From assembly GCF_000143415.4 (NCBI RefSeq), contig NW_003314421.1:182264-246263 (forward strand): a stretch of DNA of 64,000 nt, in the 5' to 3' direction. The notes under the pieces were generated by a model. That model ran no database searches, was not told the DNA's origin, and saw nothing but the letters and a program-made list of their open reading frames with translations. Of the stretch, positions 5,355 through 64,000 are shown one piece after another; the first letter of the stretch is position 1; the number at the start of each line of letters is the position of its first letter. Position numbers and translations under genes: made by a program. The DNA is from Selaginella moellendorffii (Eukaryota > Plantae > Lycopodiophyta).

Positions 5355-5590
5355 GGATGGGTGCCACTGCCTAAATTTATATAGTCCAAAAGCTGGCTAC
5401 CAAGAGACCATTGGAAATGAGCAAAGAATTTTCTCTTTAATCATACATGATAATCTGTCAAAGAATACCCTCTTTAATCACGAGGACACAGAATCTACAC
5501 CCACACTAGTTTCAAACAAAATTGCTACTATTTGCTAGTAGAATTCCTAGAATCTACACTTAAAGCTTCAACACCATGAGATCTTTGTCC

Positions 5591-6009: not shown

Positions 6010-6688
6010 CAGTTTCGCTCGACACCAAAGCTAGCCTCTCACAAGATTAGAGAGAAGGGAGAGATTAGGGAAATTCTCGATGGCATCCTTCCAAGGTAGC
6101 ACTTCCAGGATCCCCTAGCTTGGTTTGTTCATTCTAGTGAGTCAATGCATTGCAAAGAGCTTTTCTTAGCTGCCTTCAAACAGTTTCCTTAGGCACTATT
6201 CCATCTATGTTCTGTCCAACTGCGATCTTTAGTCTTAATCATTCCATGGCAAAGTCTCTCCACGGCACTCATCCAAAATGCTAAGGCCTTTAGGGATGGA
6301 CAAAAGGCTATGATGGGGATAGATCACACCCGGTATTCAAGTCATGGGACCAGTATTTTACATATTGTGGCCATTCAAGGTATATTTGTGCTGTTTCATT
6401 TTCAATCACTTGATGTTATCTTTTGTACTCCAGGTTTGGACAAGTGAAAGACCTAGTCAATGTGTCTCTGGATTCTATTGCAGACATGAGGAAACTAGAA
6501 GAGGATCAAAAGATGTATGCATGCAGAATGTTTGGATGGGTTAAGAACACAGCAATGTGCAAGTATTTGGAGCCAAAGCTCAGTGTGAAAAAGAGTAAGT
6601 AAAACTTCATAGTTTGTTCTGTCCACAATCAATCTGAGAATTTTTCTGGACTATAGAAGCAAAGCATTTGCCTATATATTTGTGTGTG

Positions 6689-23995: not shown

Positions 23996-24022
23996 AAACC
24001 CTAAACCCTAAACCCTAAACCC
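23994..24022 (-). repeat. Interstitial telomeric repeat, ~4 units (C-rich on +)
   Basis: ctaaaccctaaaccctaaaccctaaaccc. Confidence 0.95.
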
Positions 24023-24408
24023 AGTTACATGGTGAGGAAGTCCTAGAGGATAATAGGACTTAATGGTCAAGCCTTTAGACTCAGTAGTGGTGTTGACGAA
24101 TATAACCATATATAAAAAAGGACTTGGTGGGGACAGTAGAAAGGATATTGGGGGAGGGTGTCCCCCATGTCTCCGGACATCCTATGTTGGTGCTAATATG
24201 TCGGTGGTCCCTTTGGGTGTTGGTTATAGGATTGAATAGGTGGAACACTTAAACCAAGTGCAAAGATTAAGTGGCATAAATGTCATTCTTAGGGCTAGCA
24301 AGTCCCCAAGTCCGAAATAGGACTTATGGAGATTGTGAGTTAGACTCCTCTATGTGGTCGAACGTGTAGTTAAGTGACTAAAGTAAAATGGAAAATTTAG
24401 TTGTTTAT
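24023..24408 (+). mobile_element. 3' part of the large LTR family
   Basis: Matches the reverse complement of ~48637-49155 with deletions; ends ...gttaagtgactaaagtaaaatggaaaatttagttgtttata. Confidence 0.75.
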
Positions 24409-42999: not shown

Positions 43000-44915
43000 T
43001 GTAACAAACAAGGGAGCAAAAGCCTAAACCACCCTACCATAGGTCACTATATATAGTAAACCACCCCCAGGCTCTTAAGGATCATAACATTCTCCCCTCC
43101 CTCTCTCTAGACCCTTAATATCCATGAGCTTAAACGAAGCACATAGCTCAAAACAGAGCTAACCAATGGATCTAAAGAATGAAGACTCAAGTTCGGAGTA
43201 CATAGCTCAATACGGAGCTAACTTCATTCAAGGAAGGTCTAATGCACATGAAGCTTTTCTCGAAGTACAAAAACTCAAAAGACTTCATTGCCAACGAATC
43301 TACTCTCTCCCCTTCCTCAAGAAGAGTATTCGTCATCATCAGGAATATCGTCCAGATCATAATCAAACTCCGGAAAAGTTGACTTGAACTGAGATTGTTT
43401 GGCCATCAGATTGAGGATGATCACTGCTGCACATACTCAACGTGGTATTGAGTTGCTTAAACACATCTTGCCAGAACCTGCTCGTAAACTTTGGATCGCG
43501 ATTGCTTACTATATCCTCTGGCAAACCAAACGGCCTATACAACTCTTGGATAAAGAGTTGAGCCAAGTCAGAAGTCTTTACAGTTTGCTTAGTAGCAATG
43601 AAGTGGGTCATCTTCGTCAATCTGTCCACCACCACCCACGCTGAATCATTCTTCCTTTGACTCTTGGGTAGCCCCACCACAAAATCCATGGAAATTCTCT
43701 CCCATTTTCCACTGGGTACATTCAGAGGTTGTAAAACCAGCGGGCTTCTGACGATCAGCCTTGACTGCTTGACAAGTCAAACATTCTCGTATGTACTTTT
43801 CCACATCTGATTTCATACCAGGCCAAAAGAAATGTCTCTTAACCAACTCAAACGTCCTCTGAATTCCTGGATGTCCTGAGGAAAGTGTAGAGTGACACTC
43901 TGACAAAATTGGGAAGAGAAGAGAGCTCACTCGAGGAACCACAACCCGGTTCTTCTTCCACAACACCCCATCCTCCATCCTATACGAAGCAAACTTTTCT
44001 CACTGGAAGACACCATCAGATTTCTTAGAAGAAGCGTCCCTCTTCAATACATGTGCTAGCACCTCTTTTACAAAGGAGTCGAAATCATAAGCCTCCTTGA
44101 TCTCTTCCAGAAGTTTACTTGAGAGTCTTGTGATCGTTACTGAATTCACAAGCCTCGATAGAGCATCAGCCACCTGATTATCTCTACCTCTCTTATATCG
44201 GATCTCCATGTTGAACTCTTGCAAAAACTCTTGCCAACGAGCCAACCTGCCTCAGAGATCGGTCTGCTTCAGAAAATGTTGCAACGTCTGATGATCCGAG
44301 TATGCTACACTGAAGTCAGCACCATACAAATAATGCCTCCACTCCTTGGTGGCACAAACGACCGCATATAACTCTCGATCTCTAGCCGGCCAATCTAGCT
44401 GAGTACTATCAAACTTGCGACTCAAGAAAGCAACGGGACGGCCTTCTTGCAGCAGCAGAACAGCTCCCAGCGCCACATCACTAGCATCACACTCCACTAC
44501 AAACGGCTTCATTGGATCCACTATCTGAAGCACTGGAGTTGTAGCACACCGATGCTTGAGCTGTTCGAAAGCATGTTCACAACGATCGCTCCACTTGATT
44601 GTTGCATGCTTAGTAGTATTTTGAAGTAGATCTGTTAGAGGAGCAGCCACCTCTGCATAGTGATCTATAAACTTTCTGAACACACCAGCCATTCCAAGGA
44701 AACTCCTAAGGTCATGCACCATAGTGGGAACAGGCCAATTCACTACCACCTCAACCTTCTTCGGATCAATCCTAACACCATTAGCTGAGATCAAATTCCC
44801 CAGGTAAGCAATCCCCTCAAGGAAGAACTCACACTTAGATGCCTTGGAATAAAGCTTGTGCTCTCAAGCTTCTCTAACACCGAAGTCAAATGCCACTCAT
44901 GCTCCTCAGCGCCTG
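43000..44915 (-). mobile_element. Ty3/gypsy 3' part: RT C-terminus, RNase H, integrase, PPT and a ~90-bp LTR (43000-43089)
   Basis: IDPKKVEVV.NWPVP, PFVVECDAS, RELYAVV, SDHQTL, HPG..RT, MDFVVGLP, VVVDRLTK, HPQSDGQT; PPT gggaggggagaa next to a TG...CA LTR. Confidence 0.9.
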
Positions 44916-46031
44916 TGACTGACGTGCAGTCTGCTACCTGGAAAGATTCGTTTGTAAGGTTCTCAACTGGCGTACTCAGCTGTGTGACTTCGACCTGACA
45001 AATGTCTGTACTTTTCCGTCATCTTTGTTTCCTTCTCGAGACTCATCCTTCTTTCCTTCCCGAAACTCATCATCCTCAGTGAAACCACTCTCCTTTGCAT
45101 TTGCATGCCCCTTATTCTCTCTGAATGATCCTCCAGCCTTGAAGTACGATCCAATGGCCTTGTGTTTAAAATTCAGAGGAACGGTCAAGGGTGTGTTGTC
45201 TATGAGATCTTGTTTCCCTTGTTTTGGTTTTCCTTGCCTAGGCTTCCCCTCTTTGACCTTTCTCCTTTGTGGCTGCTTTCCTGAGTTCTCTTCTCTTTTT
45301 CTTTTTCCTCTGTCAGCGTCGGTCGCCAACCTTCTTCTTCGCATATTTTGCAGGATTATTTAGCCTCTATTTCAATCACAACAACTTCAGGAATTTCCAA
45401 CCCCTCTGCAACACCGGTTGGCCGTCGCAGTGTGAGCGCCGCTTGCAGTATAGGCGCCCATACCCTCCTGATTGTTTGAACCAACAACAAGTTCCTTCAT
45501 GACCTTCTCACTGTGCGCGCTCCCCGCATGATCGTTTGAACCAACAAGAAGTTCCTTTCCAACCTTCTTACTGCGCACGCCACTCGCAGTGTCTCTATTC
45601 CCGTCTGATAGTGATGCATCAGCTTTCTTAAAAAGAACTTTCACAACTGTCCTTTTGGCCGCCGGAACGTCACAGTGAATCTGTTTCACGGAAGGATGAA
45701 TTTTGTTATTTGGCTTGTTTTCTGTTGAGGAAATTAAGTTCATACAACATTATTAGTTTTTCTTACCTTCTTTATCTCTTCTTCTAGGCCTGTCGTTCTT
45801 TTTTTTGGAACGGATTTCACCCTTTTGTGCTTTTCTTGCCGGTTGGTCATCATCCTCTTCCTCTTCCGCATCTTCTTCCTCGGCAGCATCCTCAAAGAGG
45901 CAATTTTCTTTCCTTTTTTATCTACTTTTGCAGGGGGATCTTTTTCGTCCTCCTCAGCCTCCTCCTCCTCCTCGTCCTCGTCCTCCTCCACTTCATCCTT
46001 CTCCTCTTCATCATCATCTTCTTCGTCTTCC
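44915..46031 (-). pseudogene. Acidic/lysine-rich host or unknown gene fragment (inverted duplicate of 55698-56815)
   Basis: E/D-rich then K-rich coding-like sequence with frameshifts; no family recognised. Confidence 0.45.
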
Positions 46032-47816
46032 CCTCGGGCCTCCTCCCTGCTGGTCAAGAGACCATCCCGTGCTTCCTTGACTTCAAATGAGAAGAAGCTC
46101 TTCACTCCTCGTTTCCATACTGCTGGGTCCCAATCCAGATCCTCAATGAGTTGTTGTCGCCACCATTTGAGAATGTCATCCCCCTCTAGTGTGGCCATCG
46201 ATTGAACTACCACCACCTGCCTCGGAGCCTGTTGTACCACTCAAATCCTGCCCTTGACTTCGTCGTCTGTCACCATCGGCATGGCCTGTTCGTCTCCTGC
46301 TGGCAGCAGCATGTCACCTCTCATAACCCAAAAAGGACACTTGACATTTTGTTTGGGAGACACAACAAACCACACCTCCACATCGCCATCCTCCCAAGTT
46401 GGTGTAGGTGCCCGTAAACACCCATGTGCAGGCCCCCAAGCTAACTCATTCCCTGCCTAGCTCCACGTCCCGTTGCAGGCCACAAAGTCTCCAGGTTTGA
46501 GACAGTGCCTAGGCTAGAGCTGCCCCTTCTTCACTCACTCACCGCTCTGATGATGCGAAGAAGATTAAGGTGGACTTTCCTCCACCGTCCTGGGTCAAAG
46601 ACCTACATTCGCCTCGTAGTCTTCCTCCTATCCTTGTCCAGAACTCCCACCAGTTGCTTGAGAGTTCGAAAGCCTTCGCCATGCAGCTTTCTCTAGATTG
46701 TGTAGTGGTCTTCCTTGCCCAACGTCCTGTCATCCACTTTGAAGAGGTTGTTGAAGAATAGGGGCTGGTTCAGCCAGTCCTCCGCTCGCCCCGGCATTTC
46801 CCTACTGACTAGAAACTCGCTCCATAGCCTGAGGAACCCTTGAACCAGTGTGCCACCCTTGACTACTTGCTTTGGCCCTTCAACAAAAAGCCAACGTGGA
46901 TCCTCCTCCCATGGTCTTGCAATGTTGTGCCTAGGCCGGATTGCCAACAAGCTCTGCCTGAACATGAGTCTCCAAGGTTGGTTACCTGGTTGAAGGCCGA
47001 TGAGGAGGATTTTATACTGCAGCACCTTTGCCATGTCACTTGGATTGATAACTCCAAGTCCTCCTAAGACTCGCGGGCATGCTGTAGATTGCCACGCGAC
47101 CTTGGCCATGCTCCTCCTTGTGACCAGTGCGCCCCGCCACAAATACTAATGAACCATCGTGCGTACCTTTCTAAGAGTGCATTCTGGGACAGGCCAGATT
47201 GAGAGGTGGTACCAGATGTTGGGCAAAATGATGCTCCTGGCTACTACCACTCTTGCTGGAAAACCGAGTTTCTGGGGAGCCCACTTCTGGATTGACGTTC
47301 GTACCCGTCAAAGCAAGGTGTCATCCTGAAGTGCTGCACTGAACTGAGTACCAACCTGAATCCCCAAGTACCAAGTGTCCTCTCCTGGTTTGAACCACTG
47401 GAAGCCGATGTCCTGCCCCCAAGATTCAATTCCTGGCCGCCCCCAACACTGATTTGTTCCAGTTAATTGATGTGCCAGCCGCGAGGTTGAAAGTCTCCAA
47501 CACCTTCTTAGCTGCATCCAGGTTCTCCTTAGTCGCGAGTAGGAACAAGGCAGTGTCATCTACAAATGCTCCATCCAGGAGTTCCCGAGTCACCCTTGTG
47601 GTTCCTAGAAGTCACTACTCGCCACTTGTGCTCATTTTGTGTGTTCAGCAACATCCTATGTGCCTCTACCTGGCCAGTCTCAGGTCCTTCATCGCCCCTC
47701 CTTTGAGATCCTTCTGGCGCGCCTAGAGCTTCTGTGAGCAAGACAAGAGCACTGGGATCGGCCCCATCTTGTTCTGCGCAAGAGCGTCGTGTATAAGCCC
47801 GATCGGTCTCACATCA
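46032..47816 (-). mobile_element. LINE ORF2 fragment with internal deletion
   Basis: FVDDT, MAKVAWQS...LGGLGV, WLNQPLFFN and WWRQQLIEDLDWDP match the full-length LINE. Confidence 0.85.
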
Positions 47817-47843: not shown

Positions 47844-50800
47844 CAAATGTAAGTCTTTAACCCAGGACGGTGGAGGAAAGTCCACCTTGATCTTCTTCAC
47901 ATCATCAAAGCGGTGAGTGAGGCAAAGAAGGGGCAGCTCTGGCCTAGGCACTGTCTCAAACCTGGAGACTTTGTGGCCTGCAACGGGACGTGGAGCTAGG
48001 CAAGGAATGAGTTAGCTTGGGGGCCTGCACATGGGTGTTTACGGGCACCTACACCAACTTGGGAGGATGGCAATGTGGAGGTGTGGTTTGTTGTGTCTCC
48101 CAAACAGAATGTCGAGTGTCCTTTTTGGGTTACGAGAGGTGACATGCTGCTGCCAGCAGGAGACGAACAGGCCATGCCGATGGTGACGGACGACGAAGTC
48201 AAGGGCAGGATTTGAGTGGTAAGATAGGCTCTGAGGCAGGTGGTGGTAGTTCAATCGATGGCCACACTAGAGGGGGATGGCATTCTCAGATGGTGGCAAC
48301 AACAACTCATTGAGGATTTGGATTGGGACCCAGCAGCATGGAAACGAGGAGTGAAGAGCTTCTTCTCATTTGAAGTCAAGGAAGCACGGGATGGTCTCTT
48401 GACCAGCAGGGAGGAGGCCCGAGGGGAGATCCCCAAGCTCTGGAAGAAATGGATGGAGCAAGGAGTCGAAGCAAATCAGGTGGTGGACAACACGCTAGCA
48501 TTCTAGAAACTACCAGTACAGGAGAAAGTCAAGGCCACCTCTTGGTTGGTGGCAAATAACGGGCTGCTAATAGGACAGCAGTTCCAGGAGGAAGCATGCT
48601 GACGATGCAATGAGTGTGGCAAGCTAGAGACGGCGCTGTAAGCGACTAAATTTTCCATTCTACTTTAGTCACTTAACCACACCTCCGACCACTTGGAGGA
48701 GTCTCACTCACAACCTCCATAAGTCCTATTCCGGAGTTGGGGACTTGTTGGCCCCAAGAATGGCATCCGTGCCACTCAACTGTTGCACTTGGTCCAAGTG
48801 CTCCACATGTCTGGTCCCATGACCGACACCCAAAGGTATCACTGACAATTCGGCCCATTACGTTAAGGCCATGCCCATTCACCTTTGCTGCACTAGTGGT
48901 CCAATACCACTTGCATCATAATCCCGTCTCTCCAAGACTGGGCCATCCGTCTACGAGTGGTCTTCCCAGATCCACTCCTTAGCATCCTTAGGATGCCCAC
49001 AAACATGCGGAATAGCCTTCCCCAATATCCCTTTGTCAGTTCCTACCAAGTCCCTTTTCTGTCCATGGCCATGTTTGCCAACACTGCCACTAGATCAAGG
49101 CCCGGAGGCCCAGCCACTAAGTCCCATTGTCCTCTGAGATTTCCTCACCATGTGACCATATCCTTAGTCACTACACTAGAGGACAGCTCCTCCTCCTTTC
49201 CCCAGTTTGGGACTTTGGGACAACATTTCGGAACACCGTGGCCCTACACGAGCCCCGTGAGTACTCTCCCCACCTTCCGCCTTTAGGTGCTCTAGCCATG
49301 GGCTTAGAGCGAGGTTCTGTTGAGCCACGCCAGGTATCCAAGTAGGTAGTGCCACCCACACTTGGACTGGGAGCATCGGCCAGTCGATCTCCCGGGGGAA
49401 CTAGAGCCGGCTCTTGAACACTTCACCAAGCTACCCCGCTTGTCTGTCCATATTCACTCTAGTCTTGGACTTCCCAGTGGTCAGATCATCACCCAACACT
49501 GGGTCTGGCCTTCCTGGGCCAAACTGGCCTTTCCTAGCCAAACTGGCTCCACTGGAGTCCTCCCCCTACTATAATTTTGGAGCTCACCAAACCCCCCAGG
49601 GTCTGGGAGACGAACGCTTTGGGCTTTCACTCTCTCAGACTCGAACTCGGACTCGGACTCGGACTCGGGCTCGGGCTCAGTCTCGGCCTTAGCCTCGGTC
49701 TCGGTCTCGGTCCCGATCTCGGTCTCGGTCTCGGTCCTGGTCTTGGTCCTAGTCTCAGTCTCAGTCTCAGTCCCGGTCTTGGTCTCAACCTCGGACTCCA
49801 TCTCGGGTCCTTCTCGGACTCCATCTCGAATTCCATCTCGGGTCCATCTCGGACTCCATCTCGGACTCCGTCTTGGTCCATCTCGGACTCCATCTTGGAC
49901 TCCATCTCGGGCTCCATCTTGGGTCCATCTCGGACTCCATCTCGAACTTCATCTCGGGTCCATCTCGGACTCCATCTCGGACTCCATCTCAGACTCCACC
50001 TCAGGTCCATCTCGGACTCCATCTTGGACTCCACCTCGGGTCCATCTCAGACTCCATCTCGGACTCCACTTTGGGTCCATCTCAGACTCCACCTCGGGTC
50101 CATCTCGGACTCCATCTTGGACTCCACTTCGGGTCCATCTCGGACTCCATCTTGGAGTCCATCTCGGGTCCTTCTCGGACTCCATCTCGGGTCCTTAGTG
50201 GGTCCATCTCGGACTCCACTTCGGACTCCAACTCGGGTCCATCTCAGACACTTCCACGTGTCATATGTTGGTTCTTTTGGGTCCCTTTTTTGGAGCCTCG
50301 CTTATTGCTCGCTTCGTGCTTGTTCCTCGAGCACTTTGTTGGGAGTTCCACTCCCACTCTCAACTTTTCAAGTCGGAGCTTTTGGTCCAAACGTGTTACA
50401 CTCGTTTGGCTTTCACTTCGGCCACTACCACGTGGCACCCTTCTGGCTCCACTTTGGGGCCTAGGGATTTTGTGTCTCACAGGCGCGACATGTACTTTGG
50501 AGATGTGATGTGGCGAGAAAGGTATGGCGACAGATCTTCAAGGCGATGCAGGAACTAGGAGACATTCCAGAGTTCAAGGCTCAGAGCGGGGATATCCTCC
50601 ACTGGTTTGAGGGAGCTAGAGGTCCAGCCATTGGTCCAGCTTGGAGGCGTATTCGCTGTTATAGACGTCATGGATGGAACATGCGAGTTCAATGGGATGC
50701 ATTAGGGGCTGAAGTCGGGATGTCAGTCTGGGAGGCGATGGGCCACGAGCGATGGTCCATCTAGAGGGCGACTGGAGTGCAGGCACTTATGGAGGCATGG

Positions 50801-51204
50801 AACCATTGCCGCTTTGATGGGCAACAAGCGAGGATATTAGCAATGGTGGCATCGTGGTGGAGACTCACTCTTGCAGCGGTGCGGCTTCATTACACCATCC
50901 TGAAGGAGCGGGCAAAACCGAGGCAGCTAGAGGAGTGGTAGTCTAGATGGCTCCCATGCTTCGGCAGAATGGTAGGTGGTGAGATTCACTAGCAGTGGCA
51001 CCCCCCAGACTCTGTTCTACATTCAGCACGTGGGGGAGACTTGGACATCAACATGATTTGATCGAGACGACCATGTCCACTTCTACTCCAGGACTAGGTC
51101 CCGCTGTGACACAAGAGGATCACGTAGAGCAGCTCATTGAGAGGGTGACACACCCAATTTTTGTATTAGTCCCATTGGGACATGGGGAATGTACATACAT
51201 GTTT
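47841..51204 (+). mobile_element. LINE 3' fragment including the 3' end, interrupted by a solo LTR
   Basis: C-terminal ORF2 peptides (CNECGKLETA|RHVLWRC); 3' end matches 11464-11515. Confidence 0.85.
48637..50481 (-). mobile_element. Solo LTR (~1.85 kb) with GGCGC TSD
   Basis: TGTAAG...CTCACA; GGCGC at 48632-48636 and 50482-50486; internal minisatellite. Confidence 0.95.
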
Positions 51205-51243
51205 AGCGATCTCGCCCGATTGCAACACCGTAGACTGTCTTTG

Positions 51244-51284
51244 ACCCTAAACGCCTAAACACCCCTAAACCCTAAACCTAAACC
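51244..51284 (-). repeat. Degenerate interstitial telomeric repeat
   Basis: accctaaacgcctaaacacccctaaaccctaaacctaaacc; inverted copy at 59896-59936. Confidence 0.9.
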
Positions 51285-53152
51285 ATTGTGTGACACTTTT
51301 TTTTCTTGTTTTGTATGGAGGTTTTTGTCCCTGGCTCTTCCATGCATTATTCCTTGCAACCTTGCTTCAAAGTTCACATCTAACCCTCTTCTGTGGTGGT
51401 TCATCATCATCTTCTTCTTCTTCTCATGATGAGGAAGGACTCTTGTCTTGAATTTCATCACTTGTCACTTTTTGTCTCACTATTATCCTCTTCATTATCA
51501 TTGTGTTGTACCTTGTCGTCATCGTCCTCACTCTCCTAATCATTGGACATTGATGTTAATGAGGATGTATCGCTTAATGTATGTTTATCATCAACAACCT
51601 AATCGACCTTATGTCCATCATTTGGATTGTAGTTAGAGAGGTCATGGAATGGATGCTCCAATTCTTCTATTTCCCTCTGATCAAAAAGTCTCTCAGTTAG
51701 AATCCTATTGTTGACTGTCCACAACAACAATGCCCTTGACAAGGTTAGTCTGTCCTTGAGAATTCCATAAGCAGTGAAGGTTGTATCAATTCCTTCTCTG
51801 CAGACTGTATTGTAGTTGACGGAATAAACTCTGAGTCTTGAACAATATTCCTGATGAATGTCTTTTGAAGCTCTGTATAAATGGCCCTCCTTCCCTATTC
51901 ATGTCTTTGTTAGGAATCTCCTCTTCTTTGATGACAATCCCATAGACTATTGAACTGTTTGGGTTGGTAAGATCCACCAACACTAGATCATCATCTTGTA
52001 TCTCTAATGTCCACTTTTGTGGTTGTGTGGAGTTGCAGCCTCTTTTCACTCTAATGGACTCATGTAGAAGTGTTTTAGATTGCTGGGCCTAGAAACATGA
52101 AAGAACTTATTAGAATTACTTAAAATATTTTTGAAATGGGAGAGAATGGATCCTAGTGTGAGGCCTCATGCTAAGTGAAAGGGGTAATGGAAGTAATTCT
52201 ATAGGAGGTTAGTAGTATGAGGACTCAAGAATGGATGGGGTGTATGAAAGGCGTAGTGGAGGTAATTCTATAGGAGGTTATTAGCATAAGGCCTCACACT
52301 TAGGAATGGATGGGGTGTGTTTGCCAATTCCTTGATAATAATATTACTTGTCCCATGGACAGACGTTCAAGCAAGATTACCATCAAGAAACTAGACAAAC
52401 CAAAATCTTTTCAGCACTTTAGCATAAGGCCTCATGCTAATCCTTAAGCATGAGTCTAGTCACAATGTGTTGATGGAGATTATTAGCATGAAGCCTCACA
52501 CTTAGATTGCTTGTGATATTTTTCCCAGTTTCTTGATGACAATCTTATTCACTTATGCAATAAACATGCATGCAAAGGAGATTGGTGTCGAGAAACTAGG
52601 CTAGAGGAGGTGGGTGGGCTTTTTTTCTTGGTGTGAGGCCTCACACTAATGTTTTTGTGTGAGGTTGGACACCATCCATTTGTAGATTGGATTAAATTAT
52701 TATGGAGGGATGAAGTCATTTTCTTGGCATGAGGCCTCATGCTATTCATTTATATGCATTTGTTTCTTACTACTTTAGGTGTCTAGGTGAGTAATCTTAC
52801 TCGCCAATTCATCTTTGGGGTAAATGTTCAAACAAGATTGCTCCTCAAACACTTGCAAGACTGGGGAAACAGTGGAAGGTTGTATGTTTAGATGTTTGCT
52901 TAGCCATTGCCATATTTGTAGTGTCATTTTTATTTCACTTTAAGGTTCACAAGTTACACACTTTATTTCTATTCCTATCTATAGTGCCTCAGCTAGGAAA
53001 AGCTCTTTGCAATGCGTTGGCTCACTAGAATGAACAAACCAAGCTAGGGGATCCGGGAAGCGCTACTTTGGAAGGATGCCATTGAGAATTTCCCTAATCT
53101 CTCCCTTCTCTCTAATCTCGTGAGAGGCTAGCTTCGGTGTCGAGAGAAACTG

Positions 53153-55470: not shown

Positions 55471-55697
55471 ACGAAGAAGTTGTTTTTAAGAAAGCCGAAC
55501 TCGAACCAAGTGCAAAGGATCCTGGCGCTGGCACAAGCAAAAGGAAACCTGAGTGCAGAAAAAGGAAAAAGAGTCCCGCTTCAAATGAGAAAGCTAAAGA
55601 TGACCAGGAGACGGAATGATGGCAGACTTCTTCTCGAGTGGAGGAAAGGTAAAGCTCTAGTGAACTCGGCCAAGGATGACGGGGAAGATGAAGAAGT

Positions 55698-58553
55698 GGA
55701 AGACGAAGAAGATGATGATGAAGAGGAGAAGGATGAAGTGGAGGAGGACGAGGACGAGGAGGAGGAGGAGGCTGAGGAGGACGAAAAAGATCCCCCTGCA
55801 AAAGTAGATAAAAAAGGAAAGAAAATTGCCTCTTTGAGGATGCTGCCGAGGAAGAAGATGCGGAAGAGGAAGAGGATGATGACCAACCGGCAAGAAAAGC
55901 ACAAAAGGGTGAAATCCGTTCCAAAAAAAAGAACGACAGGCCTAGAAGAAGAGATAAAGAAGGTAAGAAAAACTAATAATGTTGTATGAACTTAATTTCC
56001 TCAACAGAAAACAAGCCAAATAACAAAATTCATCCTTCCGTGAAACAGATTCACTGTGACGTTCCGGCGGCCAAAAGGACAGTTGTGAAAGTTCTTTTTA
56101 AGAAAGCTGATGCATCACTATCAGACGGGAATAGAGACACTGCGAGTGGCGTGCGCAGTAAGAAGGTTGGAAAGGAACTTCTTGTTGGTTCAAACGATCA
56201 TGCGGGGAGCGCGCACAGTGAGAAGGTCATGAAGGAAGTTGTTGTTGGTTCAAACAATCAGGAGGGTATGGGCGCCTATACTGCAAGCGGCGCTCACACT
56301 GCGACGGCCAACCGGTGTTGCAGAGGGGTTGGAAATTCCTGAAGTTGTTGTGATTGAAATAGAGGCTAAATAATCCTGCAAAATATGCGAAGAAGAAGGT
56401 TGGCGACCGACGCTGACAGAGGAAAAAGAAAAAGAGAAGAGAACTCAGGAAAGCAGCCACAAAGGAGAAAGGTCAAAGAGGGGAAGCCTAGGCAAGGAAA
56501 ACCAAAACAAGGGAAACAAGATCTCATAGACAACACACCCTTGACCGTTCCTCTGAATTTTAAACACAAGGCCATTGGATCGTACTTCAAGGCTGGAGGA
56601 TCATTCAGAGAGAATAAGGGGCATGCAAATGCAAAGGAGAGTGGTTTCACTGAGGATGATGAGTTTCGGGAAGGAAAGAAGGATGAGTCTCGAGAAGGAA
56701 ACAAAGATGACGGAAAAGTACAGACATTTGTCAGGTCGAAGTCACACAGCTGAGTACGCCAGTTGAGAACCTTACAAACGAATCTTTCCAGGTAGCAGAC
56801 TGCACGTCAGTCACAGGCGCTGAGGAGCATGAGTGGCATTTGACTTCGGTGTTAGAGAAGCTTGAGAGCACAAGCTTTATTCCAAGGCATCTAAGTGTGA
56901 GTTCTTCCTTGAGGGGATTGCTTACCTGGGGAATTTGATCTCAGCTAATGGTGTTAGGATTGATCCGAAGAAGGTTGAGGTGGTAGTGAATTGGCCTGTT
57001 CCCACTATGGTGCATGACCTTAGGAGTTTCCTTGGAATGGCTGGTGTGTTCAGAAAGTTTATAGATCACTATGCAGAGGTGGCTGCTCCTCTAACAGATC
57101 TACTTCAAAATACTACTAAGCATGCAACAATCAAGTGGAGCGATCGTTGTGAACATGCTTTCGAACAGCTCAAGCATCGGTGTGCTACAACTCCAGTGCT
57201 TCAGATAGTGGATCCAATGAAGCCGTTTGTAGTGGAGTGTGATGCTAGTGATGTGGCGCTGGGAGCTGTTCTGCTGCTGCAAGAAGGCCGTCCCGTTGCT
57301 TTCTTGAGTCGCAAGTTTGATAGTACTCAGCTAGATTGGCCGGCTAGAGATCGAGAGTTATATGCGGTCGTTTGTGCCACCAAGGAGTGGAGGCATTATT
57401 TGTATGGTGCTGACTTCAGTGTAGCATACTCGGATCATCAGACGTTGCAACATTTTCTGAAGCAGACCGATCTCTGAGGCAGGTTGGCTCGTTGGCAAGA
57501 GTTTTTGCAAGAGTTCAACATGGAGATCCGATATAAGAGAGGTAGAGATAATCAGGTGGCTGATGCTCTATCGAGGCTTGTGAATTCAGTAACGATCACA
57601 AGACTCTCAAGTAAACTTCTGGAAGAGATCAAGGAGGCTTATGATTTCGACTCCTTTGTAAAAGAGGTGCTAGCACATGTATTGAAGAGGGACGCTTCTT
57701 CTAAGAAATCTGATGGTGTCTTCCAGCGAGAAAAGTTTGCTTCGTATAGGATGGAGGATGGGGTGTTGTGGAAGAAGAACCGGGTTGTGGTTCCTCGAGT
57801 GAGCTCTCTTCTCTTCCCGATTTTGTCAGAGTGTCACTCTACACCTTCCTCAGGACATCCAGGAATTCAGAGGACGTTTGAGTTGGTTAAGAGACATTTC
57901 TTTTGGCCTGGTATGAAATCAGATGTGGAAAAGTACATACGAGAATGTTTGACTTGTCAAGCAGTCAAGGCTGATCGTCAGAAGCCCGCTGGTTTTACAA
58001 CCTCTGAATGTACCCAGTGGAAAATGGGAGAGAATTTCCATGGATTTTGTGGTGGGGCTACCCAAGAGTCAAAGGAAGAATGATTCAGCGTGGGTGGTGG
58101 TGGACAGATTGACGAAGATGACCCACTTCATTGCTACTAAGCAAACTGTAAAGACTTCTGACTTGGCTCAACTCTTTATCCAAGAGTTGTATAGGCCGTT
58201 TGGTTTGCCAGAGGATATAGTAAGCAATCGCGATCCAAAGTTTACGAGCAGGTTCTGGCAAGATGTGTTTAAGCAACTCAATACCACGTTGAGTATGTGC
58301 AGCAGTGATCATCCTCAATCTGATGGCCAAACAATCTCAGTTCAAGTCAACTTTTCCGGAGTTTGATTATGATCTGGACGATATTCCTGATGATGACGAA
58401 TACTCTTCTTGAGGAAGGGGAGAGAGTAGATTCGTTGGCAATGAAGTCTTTTGAGTTTTTGTACTTCGAGAAAAGCTTCATGTGCATTAGACCTTCCTTG
58501 AATGAAGTTAGCTCCGTATTGAGCTATGTACTCCGAACTTGAGTCTTCATTCT
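55698..58553 (+). repeat. Inverted segmental duplicate of 43176-46031 (acidic fragment + gypsy pol)
   Basis: ORF translations essentially identical (56935-57477 = 44252-44794); a few SNPs. Confidence 0.95.
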
Positions 58554-60809
58554 CACACCAAGAAAAAAAGCCCACCCACCTCCTCTAGCCTAGTTTCTTG
58601 ACACCAATCTCCTTTGCATGCATGTTTATTGCATAAGTGAATAAGATTGTCATCAAGAAACTGGGAAAAATATCACAAGCAATCTAAGTGTGAGGCTTCA
58701 TGCTAGTAATCTCCATCAACACATTGTGACTGGACTCATGCTTAAGGATTAGCATGAGGCCTTATGCTAAAGTGCTGAAAAGATTTTGGTTTGTCTAGTT
58801 TCTTGATGGTAATCTTGCTTGAACGTCTGTCCATGGGACAAGTAATATTATTATCAAGGAATTGGCAAACACACCCCATCCATTCCTAAGTGTGAGGCCT
58901 TATGCTAATAACCTCCTATAGAATTACCTCCACTACGCCTTTCATACACCCCATCCATTCTTGAGTCCTCATACTATTAAGAATTACTTCCATTACCCCT
59001 TTCACTTAGCATGAGGCCTGACACTAGGATCCATTCTCTCCCATTTCAAAAATATTTTAAGTAATTCTAATAAGTTCTTTCATGTTTCTAGGCCCAGCAA
59101 TCTAAAACACTTCTACATGAGTCCATTAGAGTGAAAAGAGGCTGCAACTCCACACAACCACAAAAGTGGACATTAGAGATACAAGATGATGATCTAGTGT
59201 TGGTGGATCTTACCAACCCAAACAGTCCAATAGTCTATGGGATTGTCATCAAAGAAGAGGAGATTCCTAACAAAGACATGAATAGGGAAGGAGGGCCATT
59301 TATACAGAGCTTCAAAAGACATTCATCAGGAATATTGTTCAAGACTCAGAGTTTATTCCGTCAACTACAATACAGTCTGCAGAGAAGGAATTGATACAAC
59401 CTTCACTGCTTATGGAATCCTCAAGGACAGACTAACCTTGTCAAGGGCATTGTTGTTGTGGACAGTCAACAATAGGATTCTAACTGAGAGACTTTTTGAT
59501 CAGAGGGAAATAGAAGAATTGGAGCATCCATTCCATGACCTCTCCAACTACAATCCAAATGATGGACATAAGGTCGATTAGGTTGTTGATGATAAACATA
59601 CATTAAGCGATACATCCTCATTAACATCAATGTCCAATGATTAGGAGAGTGAGGACGATGACGACAAGGTACAACACAATGATAATGAAGAGGATAATAG
59701 TGAGACAAAAAGTGACAAGTGATGAAATTCAAGACAAGAGTCCTTCCTCATCATGAAAAGAAGAAAAAGATGATGATGAACCACCACAGAAGAGGGTTAG
59801 ATGTGAACTTTGAAGCAAGGTTGCAAGGAATAATGCATGGAAGAGCCAGGGACAAAAACCTCCATACAAAACAAGAAAAAAAAGTGTCACACAATGGTTT
59901 AGGTTTAGGGTTTAGGGGTGTTTAGGCGTTTAGGGTCAAAGACAGTCTACGGTGTTGCAATCGGGCGAGATCGCTAAACATGTATGTACATTCCCCATGT
60001 CCCAATGGGACTAATACAAAAATTGGGTGTGTCACCCTCTCAATGAGCTGCTCTACGTGATCCTCTTGTGTCACAGCGGGACCTAGTCCTGGAGTAGAAG
60101 TGGACATGGTCGTCTCAATCAAATCATGTTGATGTCCAAGTCTCCCCCACGTGCTGAATGTAGAACAGAGTCTGGGGGGTGCCACTGCTAGTGAATCTCA
60201 CCACCTACCATTCTGCCAAAGCATGGGAGCCATCTAGACTACCACTCCTCTAGCTGCCTCGGTTTTGCCCGCTCCTTTAGGATGGTGTAATGAAGCCGCA
60301 CTGCTGCAAGAGTGAGTCTCCACCACGATGCCACCATTGCTAATATCCTCGCTTGTTGCCCATCAAAGCGGCAATGGTTCCATGCCTCCATAAGTGCCTG
60401 CACTCCAGTCGCCCTCTAGATGGACCATCGCTCGTGGCCCATCGCCTCCCAGACTGACATCCCGACTTCAGCCCCTAATGCATCCCATTGAACTCGCATG
60501 TTCCATCCATGACATCTATAACAGCGAATACGCCTCCAAGCTGGACCAATGGCTGGACCTCTAGCTCCCTCAAACCAGTGGAGGATATCCCCGCTCTGAG
60601 CCTTGAACTCTGGAATGTCTCCTAGTTCCTGCATCGCCTTGAAGATCTGTCGCCATACCTTTCTCGCCACATCACATATCCAAAGTACATGTCGCGCCTG
60701 TGAGACACAAAATCCCTAGGCCCCAAAGTGGAGCCGGAAGGGTGCCACGTGGTAGTGGCCGAAGTGAAAGCCAAACGAGTGTAACACGTTTGGACCAAAA
60801 GCTCCGACT
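58552..60809 (+). repeat. Inverted segmental duplicate of 50371-52637, running into the gap
   Basis: ORF translations nearly identical (59131-59394 vs 51786-52049; 59922-60185 vs 50995-51258). Confidence 0.95.
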
Positions 60810-61048
60810 NNNNNNNNNNNNNNNNNNNNNNNNNNNNNNNNNNNNNNNNNNNNNNNNNNNNNNNNNNNNNNNNNNNNNNNNNNNNNNNNNNNNNNNNNNN
60901 NNNNNNNNNNNNNNNNNNNNNNNNNNNNNNNNNNNNNNNNNNNNNNNNNNNNNNNNNNNNNNNNNNNNNNNNNNNNNNNNNNNNNNNNNNNNNNNNNNNN
61001 NNNNNNNNNNNNNNNNNNNNNNNNNNNNNNNNNNNNNNNNNNNNNNNN
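60810..61048. other. Assembly gap
   Basis: Run of N. Confidence 1.
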
Positions 61049-62234
61049 AGCTCAAGTCTCTAAATCAAGCTCACAAGGCTGTGAAGAGATTGACTCAGCT
61101 CCGTGATAAAAAGCAGTTCCCTCAAGACCTTCGCATTCGTGTGCCAAAGCTTGAGGTGACCTCTCACGGTCAGGAACTTCTTGATGCCAGCATCAAAGCA
61201 ATCCACGAACAATACTTGAAGGACCTTCTTGATTCTCTGCTCAAGGCACGAGAGGCTGAGGCTGCTACCCTTGCGGATCTCATCAACCATGGACTCTCTC
61301 AACGTTTTAATGATCGAATGGATGATTTTGTTCACTGTGCTTTGCAGGCTTGTGGCAATGCACAACGAGAGGCTGTCACACATACTCTCAATGCCCGCAA
61401 GCATCAGTTGATAGCTGAATACCAACGTGCGACTGCAATTGGAGCAGTGGCATATGGAGTTGAGGAGAGCAAAAAGGAAAATGCTCGCAAGCAAAGGGAA
61501 GCTGCAGAGGATGCTGCACGAGCCAAGGCGGAGACACTGCCCAAGGAAGACACTGTTAAGATGCTTGTCCAGAGCTGCTTTGACAAGATGTGGAAGGAGA
61601 GGGAGCGTGGAATTCCGAGACAACACCACGAAGATGCTGGCAGAGGCACCAGATCACAAGGCAAACGACAGCAAAGGACGGATCACTCCACATACGTGAA
61701 GCAGGCTCTTCAAAGACACGCAAGGTTTCTCTCCCCAGTGGTGAACGTGACGTTACCCATGGACGGCAGGGAAACGAGCAGGGGCAGAATGTGGTTACTG
61801 GGACTCCTCCCACCCATTCCGATGCCCCGGGTTTTTCTTCAAGGGGTCCCTTGCACCGGCAATCTCCAACCGTGCTTGGTTCCCAGCCAGCCATGACTGG
61901 CAGAGGTGGCCAACGCCAGTCTCGAGGAAACGGTCGACCCCCACGGTCCCAACCGAACTGGCCAAGCGAGGGCACCAGACTACACCACGACCTCCTCCAG
62001 GAGCCCAACAACGCCAGCCAACTCAGAACCAGAAACCACCTTCACCTCCCAGAGGACAAGAGATGCAGCCCTCACAGCACCACAACAACACCCCACTCCA
62101 CGAACGAACCCAACGCTATGGCTGGGGAAGAAACTCGCCTCCACAGCAACACCCGCACTCTCCAGTTACGGCAGTGCCTGTGGACAGAAAAGGCAAGGCA
62201 AAAGTTTCTGGCTACCTTTGATTGCCCCGCATGA
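61049..62234 (+). CDS. Upstream ORF1 of the Penelope-like element (coiled coil, basic tail; 5' end in the gap; frame junction uncertain)
   Basis: Helical, charged peptide EESKKENARKQREAAEDAARAKAE directly upstream of the PLE RT; overlapping frame-3 ORF 61590-62234. Confidence 0.6.
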
Positions 62235-63939
62235 AGCTTTACTTCATTTTGCCGGCAATCAAAAAGTTTCCCAGCTAGAAAATAGAGTGGAGATTGGTGC
62301 TGTTCACAATTTGTCTTCTCGCATGTTGAGTGCCGCTGAAAAGCGCCTCCTTGCTCTTGGGCTCTCATTCATTCCTAATCCAGTGCCTCTCACGGCCAAA
62401 AAGATTATGGAATGCTTAGATGACTTTCAACGCTCAGTCCGTCTTCGTCATTCGTTTAAGGACAGCAACAGTCTTATATCAGAGTTTCGGGTTCCCAACC
62501 CAAACTTTGATCCTCCCCCTGCTTCCTGGCACATGGAGTCACGAGTTGCCCGCATTCGAGAGCACCTTCTCCAACGTCTTTCCTGTTGTAAAAGACCTCG
62601 ATCTTTTCTAAGAGGATGGAGACGTGATGCAGTCCTTGCGCTGCGACACGATCATAGTATTGTGATTAAGCCAGCCGACAAAAACCTCGGCGTAGTTGTT
62701 CTGGACCGCACGTGGTACATTCAAGAGGCTATGCGCCAACTCAATGATCCTCTTGTCTACAAGAGAGTTGAGTCGATTCCACATCAACCCATGCATGAGC
62801 GCCTCCTCGAACTTCTCCTGAAGTATAAATCTTGCTCGTGGCTGGACAAGAACACAGCCAAGTACCTCACCACTTTTCCCTCACCTCCACGTAAAGCTTG
62901 TTTGTTGTATTTTCTTCCAAAAATACATAAGCAGCCAATTCGTGGGAGACCAATTGCTAGCTATGTTGGCTACATTTGGGAGCCACTTGCAAAATGGCTT
63001 CACCGCCAACTTTTTGGCATTCTCCTCCAACAGGAAACCTTTCTTATGGACTCCCACACCCTCCATGATCTTCATAAACAACAGCTCCCAAAAGACTGCC
63101 TCCTCTTCACTTTTGATGTGGAGTCGCTCTACCCGAGCATTCCCACACGTGAAGGGCTCTATCGCCTCCATAAATTTGTATATACAAATTTTGGAGATTC
63201 AAGGCAAGCACGCTTTATCATGGCTGCTGCAGGACTCATCCTTGAACACAATTATGTTGAGTTCGATGGGAGTTATTTCCTTCAAATCCGAGGCACTGCT
63301 ATGGGGTCAAACTTTGCTGTGGTGTATGCTTGCCTTTTTCTTTGCTCCCTCGAGGACGAGTTTAAGGCCACCTCTCCTAAATGGCCAATATATCTTAAGA
63401 GATATATTGACGATGGTGTCGGAATTTGGGATGGATCAAAAGAGAGCTTGGAATGCTGGTTGGCTAGCTATGGAAGCCTCTGCAATTCTATAAAAATCAC
63501 CTCAGTGATCTCATTTGAATCTATGGATATTCTAGACATCCATTTTTTCAAAGGCCCACGCTTTGAGAAATGCAGGTGCCTAGACTCCACCACCTTTCAA
63601 AAGCCACTAAATGCATACCAATATCTTCCATGGAACTCAACGCATCCTCGACACCAAAAGATTGCCTTCATTCGTGCTGAACTTCAGCGTTACCTCCTAC
63701 GAGAGAGTAACCCTGAGAGCTTCTGTGCAATTCGCAAGCTTTTCTATACTCGTCTCCGTGCACGTGGATACCCAAGAGCCTTCCTTATTGAAGCTTTCTG
63801 GACAATCCATTATACAGACCGAGATAATGTGCTCTACTCTCCATCACGCAAATCCAGTAGCAATAGTCTACAGGCCCCCCTCATTTTCAAGCTGCCTTAT
63901 ACTCTCCATAGTGCAGCACTTGATGTGGGGACACCCTAA
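61906..63939 (+). CDS. Penelope-like element reverse transcriptase without GIY-YIG endonuclease (Athena/Coprina-type)
   Basis: IVIKPADKNLGVVV, YFLPKIHK..RGRPI, FTFDVESLYPSIP, QIRGTAMGS.FA, RYIDD, YLPWNSTHP, RARGYP; ORF open throughout and ends shortly after LIFKLPY at a TAA within CCCTAAA. Confidence 0.93.
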   Translation: MANASLEETVDPHGPNRTGQARAPDYTTTSSRSPTTPANSEPETTFTSQRTRDAALTAPQQHPTPRTNPTLWLGKKLASTATPALSSYGSACGQKRQGKSFWLPLIAPHEALLHFAGNQKVSQLENRVEIGAVHNLSSRMLSAAEKRLLALGLSFIPNPVPLTAKKIMECLDDFQRSVRLRHSFKDSNSLISEFRVPNPNFDPPPASWHMESRVARIREHLLQRLSCCKRPRSFLRGWRRDAVLALRHDHSIVIKPADKNLGVVVLDRTWYIQEAMRQLNDPLVYKRVESIPHQPMHERLLELLLKYKSCSWLDKNTAKYLTTFPSPPRKACLLYFLPKIHKQPIRGRPIASYVGYIWEPLAKWLHRQLFGILLQQETFLMDSHTLHDLHKQQLPKDCLLFTFDVESLYPSIPTREGLYRLHKFVYTNFGDSRQARFIMAAAGLILEHNYVEFDGSYFLQIRGTAMGSNFAVVYACLFLCSLEDEFKATSPKWPIYLKRYIDDGVGIWDGSKESLECWLASYGSLCNSIKITSVISFESMDILDIHFFKGPRFEKCRCLDSTTFQKPLNAYQYLPWNSTHPRHQKIAFIRAELQRYLLRESNPESFCAIRKLFYTRLRARGYPRAFLIEAFWTIHYTDRDNVLYSPSRKSSSNSLQAPLIFKLPYTLHSAALDVGTP

Positions 63940-63948
63940 ACCCTAAAC
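63933..63948 (-). repeat. Telomeric repeat (CCCTAAA)2 on the PLE sense strand
   Basis: accctaaaccctaaac overlapping the RT stop codon at 63937-63939. Confidence 0.85.
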
Positions 63949-64000
63949 AGGTGATTTCTGAAGGCCCATCCGCAGGGCGGCCCCCGATGCGGCAAACAGA

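What the first reader, a model, noticed from the sequence alone, without database searches (positions are those of the whole stretch)
61049..64000. Endonuclease-less Penelope-like RT whose stop codon lies inside C-rich telomeric repeats
Seen: an uninterrupted PLE RT ORF preceded by a coiled-coil ORF, ending ...GTP-TAA within ACCCTAAACCCTAAAC, with no GIY-YIG domain. Known: EN-deficient PLEs (Athena/Coprina type, also reported in Selaginella) attach to chromosome ends through C-rich telomeric repeats on their sense strand. Inference: this is a potentially active telomere-attached retroelement; the tract is either its attachment site or the cap of the next element in a chain. It is the only retroelement RT in the window with an intact ORF.
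Basis: partly seen in the sequence, partly recalled or inferred. Interest (0 to 1): 0.8.

Follow-up and report, generated by a model that had tools for sequence, protein, structure and literature searches.

The report
Broken copy of spikemoss telomeric retroelement
This is a damaged copy of a chromosome-end jumping gene already reported in the spikemoss Selaginella; its "telomeric repeat at the stop codon" is ordinary coding sequence thrown out of frame by a one-letter deletion, although that short telomere-like stretch is conserved letter for letter in relatives from conifers, which is unexpected.

Summary
The sequence is as described: an RT reading frame ends at TAA (63937-63939) inside ACCCTAAACCCTAAAC (63933-63948), and there is no GIY-YIG domain.

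- **The tract is coding sequence.** A 98.5% identical paralogue (Selaginella moellendorffii GL377752.1, locus L001) reads straight through the same 16 letters as Thr-Leu-Asn-Pro-Lys. It continues for 38 more codons into a C-terminal tail conserved in conifer relatives.
- **The stop is a frameshift.** The window copy lacks one A at 63930/63931, which brings TAA into frame.
- **The copy is not intact.** It also has two 4-nt frameshifting deletions in ORF1, loses homology after about 63963, and is cut by an N gap at its 5' side.
- **The real attachment tract is elsewhere.** In L001 it lies about 2.2 kb further on, behind a terminal module.
- **The family assignment holds.** It is endonuclease-less and flanked by sense-strand CCCTAAA tracts. 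This is already published for Selaginella (Gladyshev & Arkhipova 2007, as cited in PMC12477314).
- **New here.** The core CCTAAACCC is the longest run of invariant nucleotides in ORF2 across six lineages that share only 42-63% amino-acid identity.

Earlier notes of this scan describe the same element's 3' tail on other DNA; none mentions the internal motif.

The parts
60810..61048 (.). Scaffold gap (239 N) that removes the element's 5' part: the 5' UTR and about 510 codons of ORF1
   Evidence: L001 ORF1 is 902 aa, and only residues 511-902 map to the window.
61049..61682 (+). ORF1 coiled-coil segment, frame 1 (about residues 511-722 of the paralogue's ORF1)
   Evidence: tblastn of L001 ORF1. 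Only weak helical-bundle Pfam hits.
61683..61966 (+). ORF1 continues in frame 3 after a 4-nt deletion (TACC) at 61682
   Evidence: One contig of run X1 carries the TACC.
61967..62221 (+). End of ORF1 in frame 2 after a second 4-nt deletion (CGGC) at 61966; the ORF1 stop TGA is at 62219-62221
   Evidence: CGGC is present in the contigs covering this site in all four runs laid.
62218..63936 (+). ORF2, the Penelope-like reverse transcriptase. It begins at TTG overlapping the ORF1 stop (TTGA), in the -1 frame. YIDD lies at 63403-63414, and there is an in-frame 3-nt deletion at 63059.
   Evidence: The precomputed Pfam hits of the 97% identical P0001 are DUF8422 and HTH_animal. RVT_1 scores E=1.2e-4.
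63875..63930 (+). C-run (63875-63880) and G-run (63927-63930), predicted to pair into a hairpin whose 3' foot touches the motif
   Evidence: The Pro codon CCC and Gly codon GGG are invariant.
63930..63931 (+). Site of the 1-nt deletion (GGGGAACACCC becomes GGGGACACCC) that shifts the frame
   Evidence: Most contig depth in three independent runs has the extra A.
63933..63948 (+). Telomere-like 16-mer ACCCTAAACCCTAAAC. In the intact frame it encodes Thr-Leu-Asn-Pro-Lys. Its core CCTAAACCC is nucleotide-invariant across relatives.
63937..63939 (+). Premature TAA created by the frameshift
63949..63963 (+). Last stretch homologous to the paralogue's ORF2 tail (QVISE), here out of frame
63964..64000 (+). 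37 nt unrelated to the family. This is a rearrangement, an insertion or an assembly join; the window ends here.
   Evidence: Contigs of runs X2, X4 and X8 run on with the L001-type tail instead.

Best explanation
Window 61049-63963 is a dead, partial copy of the endonuclease-deficient, telomere-associated Penelope-like element (PLE) family of Selaginella moellendorffii. The tract ACCCTAAACCCTAAAC is not where the element ends. It lies inside ORF2, about 40 codons before the true stop, and encodes Thr-Leu-Asn-Pro-Lys. The stop codon seen there exists only because this copy has lost one A just upstream.

**How the family works (shown in the intact paralogue L001)**
- The layout is: telomeric tract, 5' UTR, ORF1 (902 aa, coiled coil), ORF2 (615 codons, RT, -1 frame, overlapping the ORF1 stop), 3' UTR with a hammerhead ribozyme or its remnant, a terminal module, then (CCCTAAA)n.

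**Inferred from published work on Athena and Terminons**
- The C-rich repeats at the RNA 3' end pair with the G-rich chromosome overhang.
- The 3'-OH of that overhang primes reverse transcription.
- This gives head-to-tail elements separated by telomeric tracts, with no need for an endonuclease.

**The internal motif (shown)**
- The telomere-like core is held constant at the nucleotide level in land-plant relatives.

**The internal motif (inferred)**
- It therefore does something for the element beyond coding.
- My preferred guess is a second site on the RNA that pairs with the G-overhang and docks the RNA-protein complex at the chromosome end.
- A telo-box-type promoter element is the next-best guess.
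For: - **Paralogue.** L001 is 98.5% identical over window 61049-63970. Its ORF reads ...ALDVGNTLNPKQVISEVPSDSLLRVITCWTRSPNLASHLVSARLPPYG* through the same 16-mer.
- **Indels.** They are mapped and the frames.
- **Independent runs.** Most contig depth carries the extra A at 63930 (X2 907/1280, X4 437/520, X8 all). Contigs continue with the L001-type tail at 63970.
- **Relatives.** Conifer-type proteins keep (T/I/S/A)LNP(T/K/E)L plus the CW..(R/P).L.S.LV tail and carry no GIY-YIG.
- **No endonuclease.** None was found in the paralogue or the window.
- **True ends.** L001 has telomeric tracts at 4470-4717 and 11913-12072 and a conserved terminal module. The neighbouring copy has a canonical hammerhead core at L001 2603 onward.
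- **Tree.** Window plus L001 are sister (support 99) to a conifer/Ginkgo clade. Both lie inside a 64-row clade that contains none of the rows flagged as GIY-YIG-like (support 95).
- **Nucleotide constraint.** CCTAAACCC is the longest invariant run (9 nt; the next longest is 5 nt) in 568 aligned codons of six ORF2s. Third-position invariance is 3.2% overall. Of 36 invariant Leu columns, only this one keeps a single codon, CTA, which makes up 3-10% of Leu codons in these ORFs.
- **Literature.** PMC8557442, PMC6431247, PMC4209133 and PMC12477314.
Against: - The window ends 37 nt after the break, so this copy's own 3' end cannot be seen.
- The argument rests on one paralogous locus plus short contigs.
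- The 1-nt deletion could in principle be an assembly error. However, part of the contig depth in runs X2 and X4 lacks the extra A.
- Telomere proximity of this window is not shown. The window has inverted duplications and telomeric tracts in both orientations.
- The hammerhead in the L001 copy of this subfamily looks degenerate.
- No experiment bears on the role of the internal motif. Three sub-lineages of the plant clade lack it.
Confidence: 0.9

Rival explanations
1. One reading: an intact, potentially active endonuclease-less PLE whose ORF naturally stops inside its 3' telomeric attachment repeats, or inside the cap of the next element in a chain.
For: - The stop is literally inside a 16-nt telomere-like tract.
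- The family is telomere-associated.
- In one distant relative (L044) the ORF2 tail does run through CCCTAA repeats.
Against: - The same 16-mer is read through in the 98.5% identical paralogue and in every complete ORF2 from the gymnosperm-type relatives examined. A conserved tail follows it.
- Homology to the paralogue continues 15 nt beyond the tract.
- Most contig depth in three runs carries the undeleted frame.
- Two further frameshifts lie in ORF1.
Confidence: 0.03
2. A broken copy of an endonuclease-containing PLE (Penelope/Poseidon, Neptune or Dryad type) that lost its GIY-YIG domain by truncation.
For: - The copy is truncated near its 3' end.
- The residues PLIFKLPY...CW...LV are homologous to the segment that precedes the endonuclease linker in EN+ relatives such as P0056.
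Against: - The intact paralogue stops 38 codons after the tract, and there is no GIY-YIG in any frame of the locus.
- None of the 24 rows of the surrounding land-plant clade was among the rows flagged as GIY-YIG-like. The flagged rows fall outside the 64-row clade.
Confidence: 0.02
3. The telomere-like letters are a by-product of a conserved peptide (TLNP) plus chance codon choice, with no function at the nucleic-acid level.
For: - The peptide LG..LNP.L is conserved.
- Several sub-lineages lost it without obvious harm.
- Only six to eight sequences were available, and some are 63% identical to each other.
Against: - It is the longest invariant nucleotide run of the whole ORF2.
- The rare Leu codon CTA is used in every lineage, while neighbouring Leu and Asn codons vary.
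- Given the amino acids, the joint probability is about 5e-10 under independence.
- Invariant CCC and GGG codons lie nearby and can pair.
Confidence: 0.07

Closest known systems
Endonuclease-deficient PLEs of Selaginella moellendorffii (Gladyshev & Arkhipova 2007, as cited in PMC8557442, PMC4209133 and PMC12477314)
   Same: Same host. RT without GIY-YIG. Sense-strand C-rich telomeric repeats behind the 3' end. A hammerhead ribozyme in the terminal region.
   Different: Probably nothing at the level of the family. I could not read the 2007 paper, so I cannot say whether it already shows the in-frame telomere-like stretch in ORF2. This particular copy is degenerate.
Athena elements and Terminons of bdelloid rotifers; Coprina elements of fungi and other hosts
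   Same: EN-less PLE RT, a coiled-coil ORF1, head-to-tail chains separated by short telomeric tracts, and reverse-complement telomeric repeats next to a hammerhead motif at the 3' end (PMC6431247).
   Different: The plant clade has the 7-nt plant-type repeat and an extra telomere-like core inside ORF2. Placement relative to named Athena or Coprina references was not tested because no reference sequences were at hand.
EN+ PLEs (Penelope/Poseidon including conifer 'Dryad', Neptune, Nematis, Naiad/Chlamys)
   Same: RT core, the N-terminal motifs (DUF8422), the thumb, and the segment up to the CW..LV motif.
   Different: No GIY-YIG domain at either end.
Telomerase RNA template with a template-boundary helix
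   Same: A C-rich stretch of 1.3-2.3 telomeric repeats in an RNA tied to a TERT-related RT, with a predicted helix just 5' of it.
   Different: Here it lies inside a protein-coding frame. Use as a template is not shown, and support for the helix is modest.
Plant telo-box (AAACCCTAA) promoter element
   Same: The same letters. In PLEs the upstream tandem copy is thought to supply the promoter.
   Different: Located 129 nt before the ORF2 stop. No transcription start data.

Membership tests
Penelope-like element RT | RT core with catalytic YxDD, plus the PLE-specific N-terminal motifs and thumb (Pfam DUF8422 and HTH_animal) | tested here: met
   YIDD lies at 63403-63414. RVT_1 scores E=1.2e-4, below the gathering score. 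The 97% identical P0001 carries precomputed PF28514, PF26215 and PF00078. 86 homologues share the same domain set.
Endonuclease-deficient, telomere-associated PLE (Athena/Coprina type) | No GIY-YIG endonuclease in the element | tested here: met
   Pfam found none at E<=1 in the window ORFs or in the paralogue ORF1/ORF2, and the positive control P0056 scored. tblastn with six GIY-YIG tails gave no convincing hit.
Endonuclease-deficient, telomere-associated PLE (Athena/Coprina type) | Reverse-complement (C-rich) telomeric repeats on the sense strand at the element's 3' end | tested here: met
   Met for the family: L001 11913-12072, and 4470-4717 behind the upstream copy. Not testable for the window copy, whose 3' end is lost.
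Endonuclease-deficient, telomere-associated PLE (Athena/Coprina type) | Hammerhead ribozyme motif next to the 3' repeats | tested here: inconclusive
   A canonical CUGAUGA...GAAA core is present in the neighbouring copy (L001 2603 onward). Only a degenerate version is present in the paralogue of the window copy. Weak Rfam HH9/type III hits occur in gymnosperm units. Published for Selaginella PLEs (PMC4209133).
Endonuclease-deficient, telomere-associated PLE (Athena/Coprina type) | Location at chromosome ends, with 5' ends pointing outward and capped by telomeric repeats | not testable with these tools
   Only scaffold pieces are available. L001 shows the telomeric tract directly before the 5' end. 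The window has tracts in both orientations and inverted duplications.
Athena or Coprina clade (phylogenetic membership) | RT groups with named reference elements in a tree | not tested
   No named Athena or Coprina sequences were available. The tree shows only a streptophyte clade of EN-less elements, set apart from the rows flagged as GIY-YIG-like.
EN+ PLE (including conifer Dryad) | C-terminal (or N-terminal) GIY-YIG domain | tested here: not met
Telomerase-RNA-like template | About 1.5 C-rich repeats, conserved at the nucleotide level, in the RNA used by the RT | tested here: met
   A 9-nt invariant core, extended to 12-16 nt in each lineage.
Telomerase-RNA-like template | Boundary helix 5' of the template, and actual copying of the template onto DNA ends | tested here: inconclusive
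   Hairpin: 83.7% of cells paired, against 67% or less when slid. Covariation is 0.294 against 0.18 shuffled, but the structure was derived from the same sequences. Copying of the template cannot be tested here.

The most novel reading that the evidence does not exclude
The mRNA of land-plant EN-less PLEs carries a telomerase-RNA-like template: CCUAAACCC, 1.3-2.3 repeats, with a boundary hairpin just 5' of it. It has been kept since the split of lycophytes and seed plants. The PLE RT would use it to add TTTAGGG repeats to chromosome ends, or to prime on circular hammerhead-processed RNA and so make tandem arrays. That would be a living intermediate between a retroelement and telomerase.
Probability: 0.07. 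Interest if true: 0.9.

Novelty: already known. Interest (0 to 1): 0.4.

Why it matters
As filed, the finding is ordinary. EN-less, telomere-attached PLEs of Selaginella are in the literature, and this copy is a dead one whose odd stop codon comes from a frameshift.

What may matter is the by-product. A telomere-like core inside the RT gene is the most strongly conserved nucleotide stretch of the whole ORF in lineages that otherwise share under 50% of their amino acids with the Selaginella element. A possible hairpin sits next to it. PLE RTs are the closest relatives of telomerase RT. A conserved internal C-rich motif in their RNA therefore gives a concrete, testable handle on how such elements find or extend chromosome ends, and on how a templating RNA could have arisen.

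Tried and rejected
- **Rfam.** Scans of the window region and of L001 5000-12000 found no hammerhead. The ribozyme core was then found by pattern outside that range.
- **The 37 nt after the break.** They match nothing in the window or in any fetched locus, so their origin is open.
- **Cryptomeria and some Logan loci.** No DNA could be fetched for P0004, P0010 and P0014 because the files were too large. Cluster members were used instead.
- **Papers not held.** Gladyshev & Arkhipova 2007 and Arkhipova et al. 2017 could not be read. What they say is taken from papers that cite them.
- **Tree.** The IQ-TREE 'quick' search did not finish in time. The tree reported is FastTree.
- **Sequencing runs.** No RNA run holds the stretch. 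Expression and RNA ends therefore could not be tested, and the runs laid are contigs only.
- **Site II (TCP) promoter motif.** I considered that the GGGCCC before the telo-box-like core could be one. I dropped the idea because only four of seven lineages have it.
- **Motif as unit junction in tandem arrays.** In Selaginella the junction is clearly elsewhere. No array end at the motif was seen.
Full report
**What is in the window**

After a 239-N scaffold gap (60810-61048) the + strand carries a helical ORF1 fragment and a reverse-transcriptase frame. That frame ends ...ALDVGTP-TAA, with the TAA at 63937-63939 inside ACCCTAAACCCTAAAC at 63933-63948. The window stops 52 nt later. Matches to CCCTAAACCCTAAA with at most one mismatch occur 8 times in the window, where shuffles give none. 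No second copy of the RT is in the window. Pfam sees only a sub-threshold RVT_1 match and no GIY-YIG.

**Whose element it is**

The best protein match, at 97% identity, is an uncharacterised protein of Selaginella moellendorffii. The next matches, at about 45%, are 600-626-residue proteins of Cryptomeria japonica and unnamed assemblies. They carry the Pfam families DUF8422 and HTH_animal but no GIY-YIG. GIY-YIG appears only in more distant hits.

The Selaginella protein is encoded on GL377752.1, fetched as L001. L001 6719-9652 is 98.5% identical to window 61049-63970.

**The tract is coding sequence**

- In L001 the same letters read GGG AAC ACC CTA AAC CCT AAA CAG. The frame goes on...ALDVGNTLNPKQVISEVPSDSLLRVITCWTRSPNLASHLVSARLPPYG, then stop.
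- The window copy has GGGGACACCC where L001 has GGGGAACACCC. One A is missing, and that puts TAA in frame.
- The tail behind the tract is conserved in the conifer-type proteins (...ICWRN.R.L.SFLVRS). It is homologous to the segment that precedes the endonuclease linker in EN+ relatives. The functional frame must therefore read through the tract.
- In contigs of three independent runs, most of the depth at 63930 carries the extra A (907 of 1280, 437 of 520, and all of 7.8). At 63970 those contigs continue with the L001-type tail, not with the window's last letters.

**The copy is not intact**

- Relative to L001 it has 4-nt deletions at 61682 and 61966, a 3-nt deletion at 63059 and the 1-nt deletion at 63930.
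- The 902-residue ORF1 of L001 maps to the window in frames 1, 3 and 2, and only from residue 511 onward.
- The real ORF2 starts at 62218, at a TTG that overlaps the ORF1 stop (TTGA) in the -1 frame.
- Homology stops at about 63963. The remaining 37 nt match nothing that I hold.

**What an intact element looks like**

L001 gives this order:

1. A sense-strand telomeric tract (4470-4717).
2. The 5' end at about 4718.
3. ORF1 (5191-7899).
4. ORF2 (7896-9743).
5. A 3' UTR with a ~150-nt tandem duplication.
6. A terminal module.
7. Degenerate CCCTAAA repeats (11913-12072).
8. A 5'-truncated Ty3/gypsy RT.

The terminal module is split by a 1.65-kb insert flanked by a duplicated GC(G/A)ATCTCGCCGGATTGCA. 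This agrees with earlier notes of this scan.

A second, 5'-truncated copy of a diverged subfamily lies upstream in L001. It has a canonical hammerhead core (CUGAUGA-GUCC...GGAC-GAAA) starting at 2603. The copy that matches the window has only a degenerate version.

This layout fits the published picture of EN-less PLEs: reverse-complement telomeric repeats next to a hammerhead motif at the 3' end, which pair with the G-rich overhang so that it primes reverse transcription (PMC6431247; PMC8557442). EN-less PLEs at Selaginella telomeres, and hammerheads in them, are already published (PMC12477314; PMC4209133).

**No endonuclease**

The intact paralogue's ORF1 and ORF2 have no GIY-YIG at E<=1, while the control P0056 scores E=7e-6. 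GIY-YIG tails of six relatives find nothing convincing in L001 or the window in any frame.

In a FastTree of 84 RTs, the window and L001 pair together. They are sister (support 99) to a 22-row clade with Cryptomeria, a Picea-like family and Ginkgo, with Closterium nearby. All of these sit in a 64-row clade (support 95) that contains none of the rows flagged as GIY-YIG-like. I had no named Athena or Coprina sequences, so I cannot name the clade.

**Relatives and telomeres**

Among 80 metagenomic loci that encode relatives, several carry (CCCTAA)n or (CCCTAAA)n on the RT sense strand. L074 has it at both contig ends.

Gymnosperm-type relatives form head-to-tail arrays:

- A 24-kb contig holds at least five units about 3.8 kb apart.
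- A 3.9-kb unit assembles as a circle in three runs.
- Between units lie a hammerhead and a short, often degenerate telomere-like box just before ORF1.

**The unexpected part**

The peptide LG..LNP.L is kept in Selaginella and in both halves of the sister clade. In every lineage for which I could get DNA, it is spelled ..C CTA AAC CC(T/A). These lineages are two Selaginella subfamilies, four Logan contigs, the Picea-like array and a Cryptomeria-type contig.

An unbiased scan of six full ORF2s (42-63% amino-acid identity, 568 ungapped codons) gives:

| Measure | Result |
|---|---|
| Longest invariant nucleotide run in the gene | CCTAAACCC, 9 nt |
| Next-longest runs | 5 nt, three of them (in the ...GTAMG..., ...VYAC... 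and ...FDVE... stretches) |
| Third positions invariant overall | 3.2% |
| Identical codons among 160 invariant degenerate amino-acid columns | 7 |
| Of those, within one 22-codon stretch | 4 (CCC, GGG, CTA, AAC) |

CTA makes up only 3-10% of Leu codons in these ORFs. Given the amino acids, the chance of the shared spelling in four other lineages is about 5e-10 if they are independent.

The invariant C-run and G-run are predicted to pair in a hairpin whose 3' foot overlaps the start of the motif. In that structure 83.7% of cells are paired, against at most 67% when partners are slid. The covariation score is 0.294 against 0.18 in shuffles (0 of 500 reach it). The structure was derived from these same sequences, so this is modest support.

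In the Picea-like array the motif is the only telomere-like 9-mer in each unit. Sub-lineages that lack the peptide also lack the motif at that place.

**What the motif may do**

This is inference, not shown.

- Selection has acted on the element's nucleic acid. My first guess is a second pairing site for the G-overhang that holds the RNA-protein complex at the chromosome end.
- The second guess is a telo-box-like promoter element acting on the next unit of an array.
- The boldest reading is a telomerase-like internal template with a boundary helix, or a priming site on circular hammerhead-processed RNA. I give that low odds.

A literature search for Penelope-like elements together with 'telo-box' found nothing. 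The scan's own notes hold nothing on it either. However, I could not read the 2007 paper that first described these elements.

**Verdict**

The region is a degenerate copy of a known element family. The tract is internal coding sequence, and the stop is a frameshift artefact of this copy. The family-level claim (EN-less, telomere-attaching) stands and is already known. The nucleotide-level conservation of the internal telomere-like core is worth a follow-up of its own.

Noticed in passing
window 23940-24025: A Ty1/copia RT reading frame (...QQFQMKDLGQVSY) breaks off in mid-domain and runs directly into (CCCTAAA)3, then unrelated sequence. This is a 3'-truncated non-PLE retroelement joined to C-strand telomeric repeats, as if another RNA had been copied onto a chromosome end.
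   Followed up: no
window 44000-46047 vs 55682-57729; 50371-52637 vs 58552-60809: Large inverted duplications, 100% and 99% complementary. The second runs right up to the N gap that precedes the PLE copy. This is either a real palindromic structure or an assembly problem, so the PLE's upstream context is unreliable.
   Followed up: partly
window 51161-51284 (+) and 60019-59896 (-): Two copies of the ~125-nt PLE terminal module followed by short degenerate telomeric repeats, 85% identical to L001 4380-4503 and 11829-11953. They lie inside the inverted duplication.
   Followed up: partly
L001 10236-11866: A 1.65-kb non-coding insert inside the PLE terminal module, flanked by a duplicated GC(G/A)ATCTCGCCGGATTGCA. 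The same insert is present in the neighbouring copy (L001 2671-4627, 98% identical). This matches earlier scan notes on a site-specific parasite of this module.
   Followed up: partly
L001 12073-12340: Directly behind the ~150-nt telomeric tract that ends the PLE, a Ty3/gypsy RT starts in mid-domain (GHFEYTVMPFGLTNAP...). This is a 5'-truncated element capped by telomeric repeats, as in terminal arrays.
   Followed up: no
L090 3509-3607: The 3' UTR of a Cryptomeria-type EN-less PLE contains a 5S rRNA-like segment (Rfam 5S_rRNA, 38 bits, at the gathering score). L005 ends in similar letters. It could be a captured module or a sign of insertion near 5S genes.
   Followed up: no
L088 5400-21881: A head-to-tail array of at least five ORF1+ORF2 units, about 3.8 kb apart, in a 24-kb metagenome contig. 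It starts with a 5'-truncated unit beside a Ty3/gypsy element. A 612-aa cluster member is annotated in a Picea glauca mitochondrial gene set (ABT39_MTgene4059).
   Followed up: partly
L007 1-21 and 3750-3772: This contig is a cDNA with SMART-type adapter letters at both ends. The 3' adapter abuts ...ACCCTAAACCCTGAACTTA, 10 nt after the internal motif. This could be a real RNA end or a cloning accident.
   Followed up: no
window 62179 (loose end in run X8): In another sample (organism B) a contig matches the family up to 62179, near the end of ORF1, and then continues as AAAACCCTAAAAACCCTAAACCCTAA. This is a 3'-truncated copy joined to C-strand telomeric repeats.
   Followed up: no
L044 2057-2090: In a distant EN-less relative with a TTAGGG-type host, ORF2 runs through CCCTAA repeats after its conserved C-terminal motif (translated ...PNPNPIPIPNP...) and stops 40 nt later.
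   Followed up: no
window 62218-62221 / L001 7896-7899: ORF2 has no ATG at its conserved start. It begins at a TTG overlapping the ORF1 stop (TTGA) in the -1 frame. Gymnosperm relatives instead have an ATG 6-30 nt after the ORF1 stop. This suggests reinitiation or frameshifting in Selaginella.
   Followed up: no
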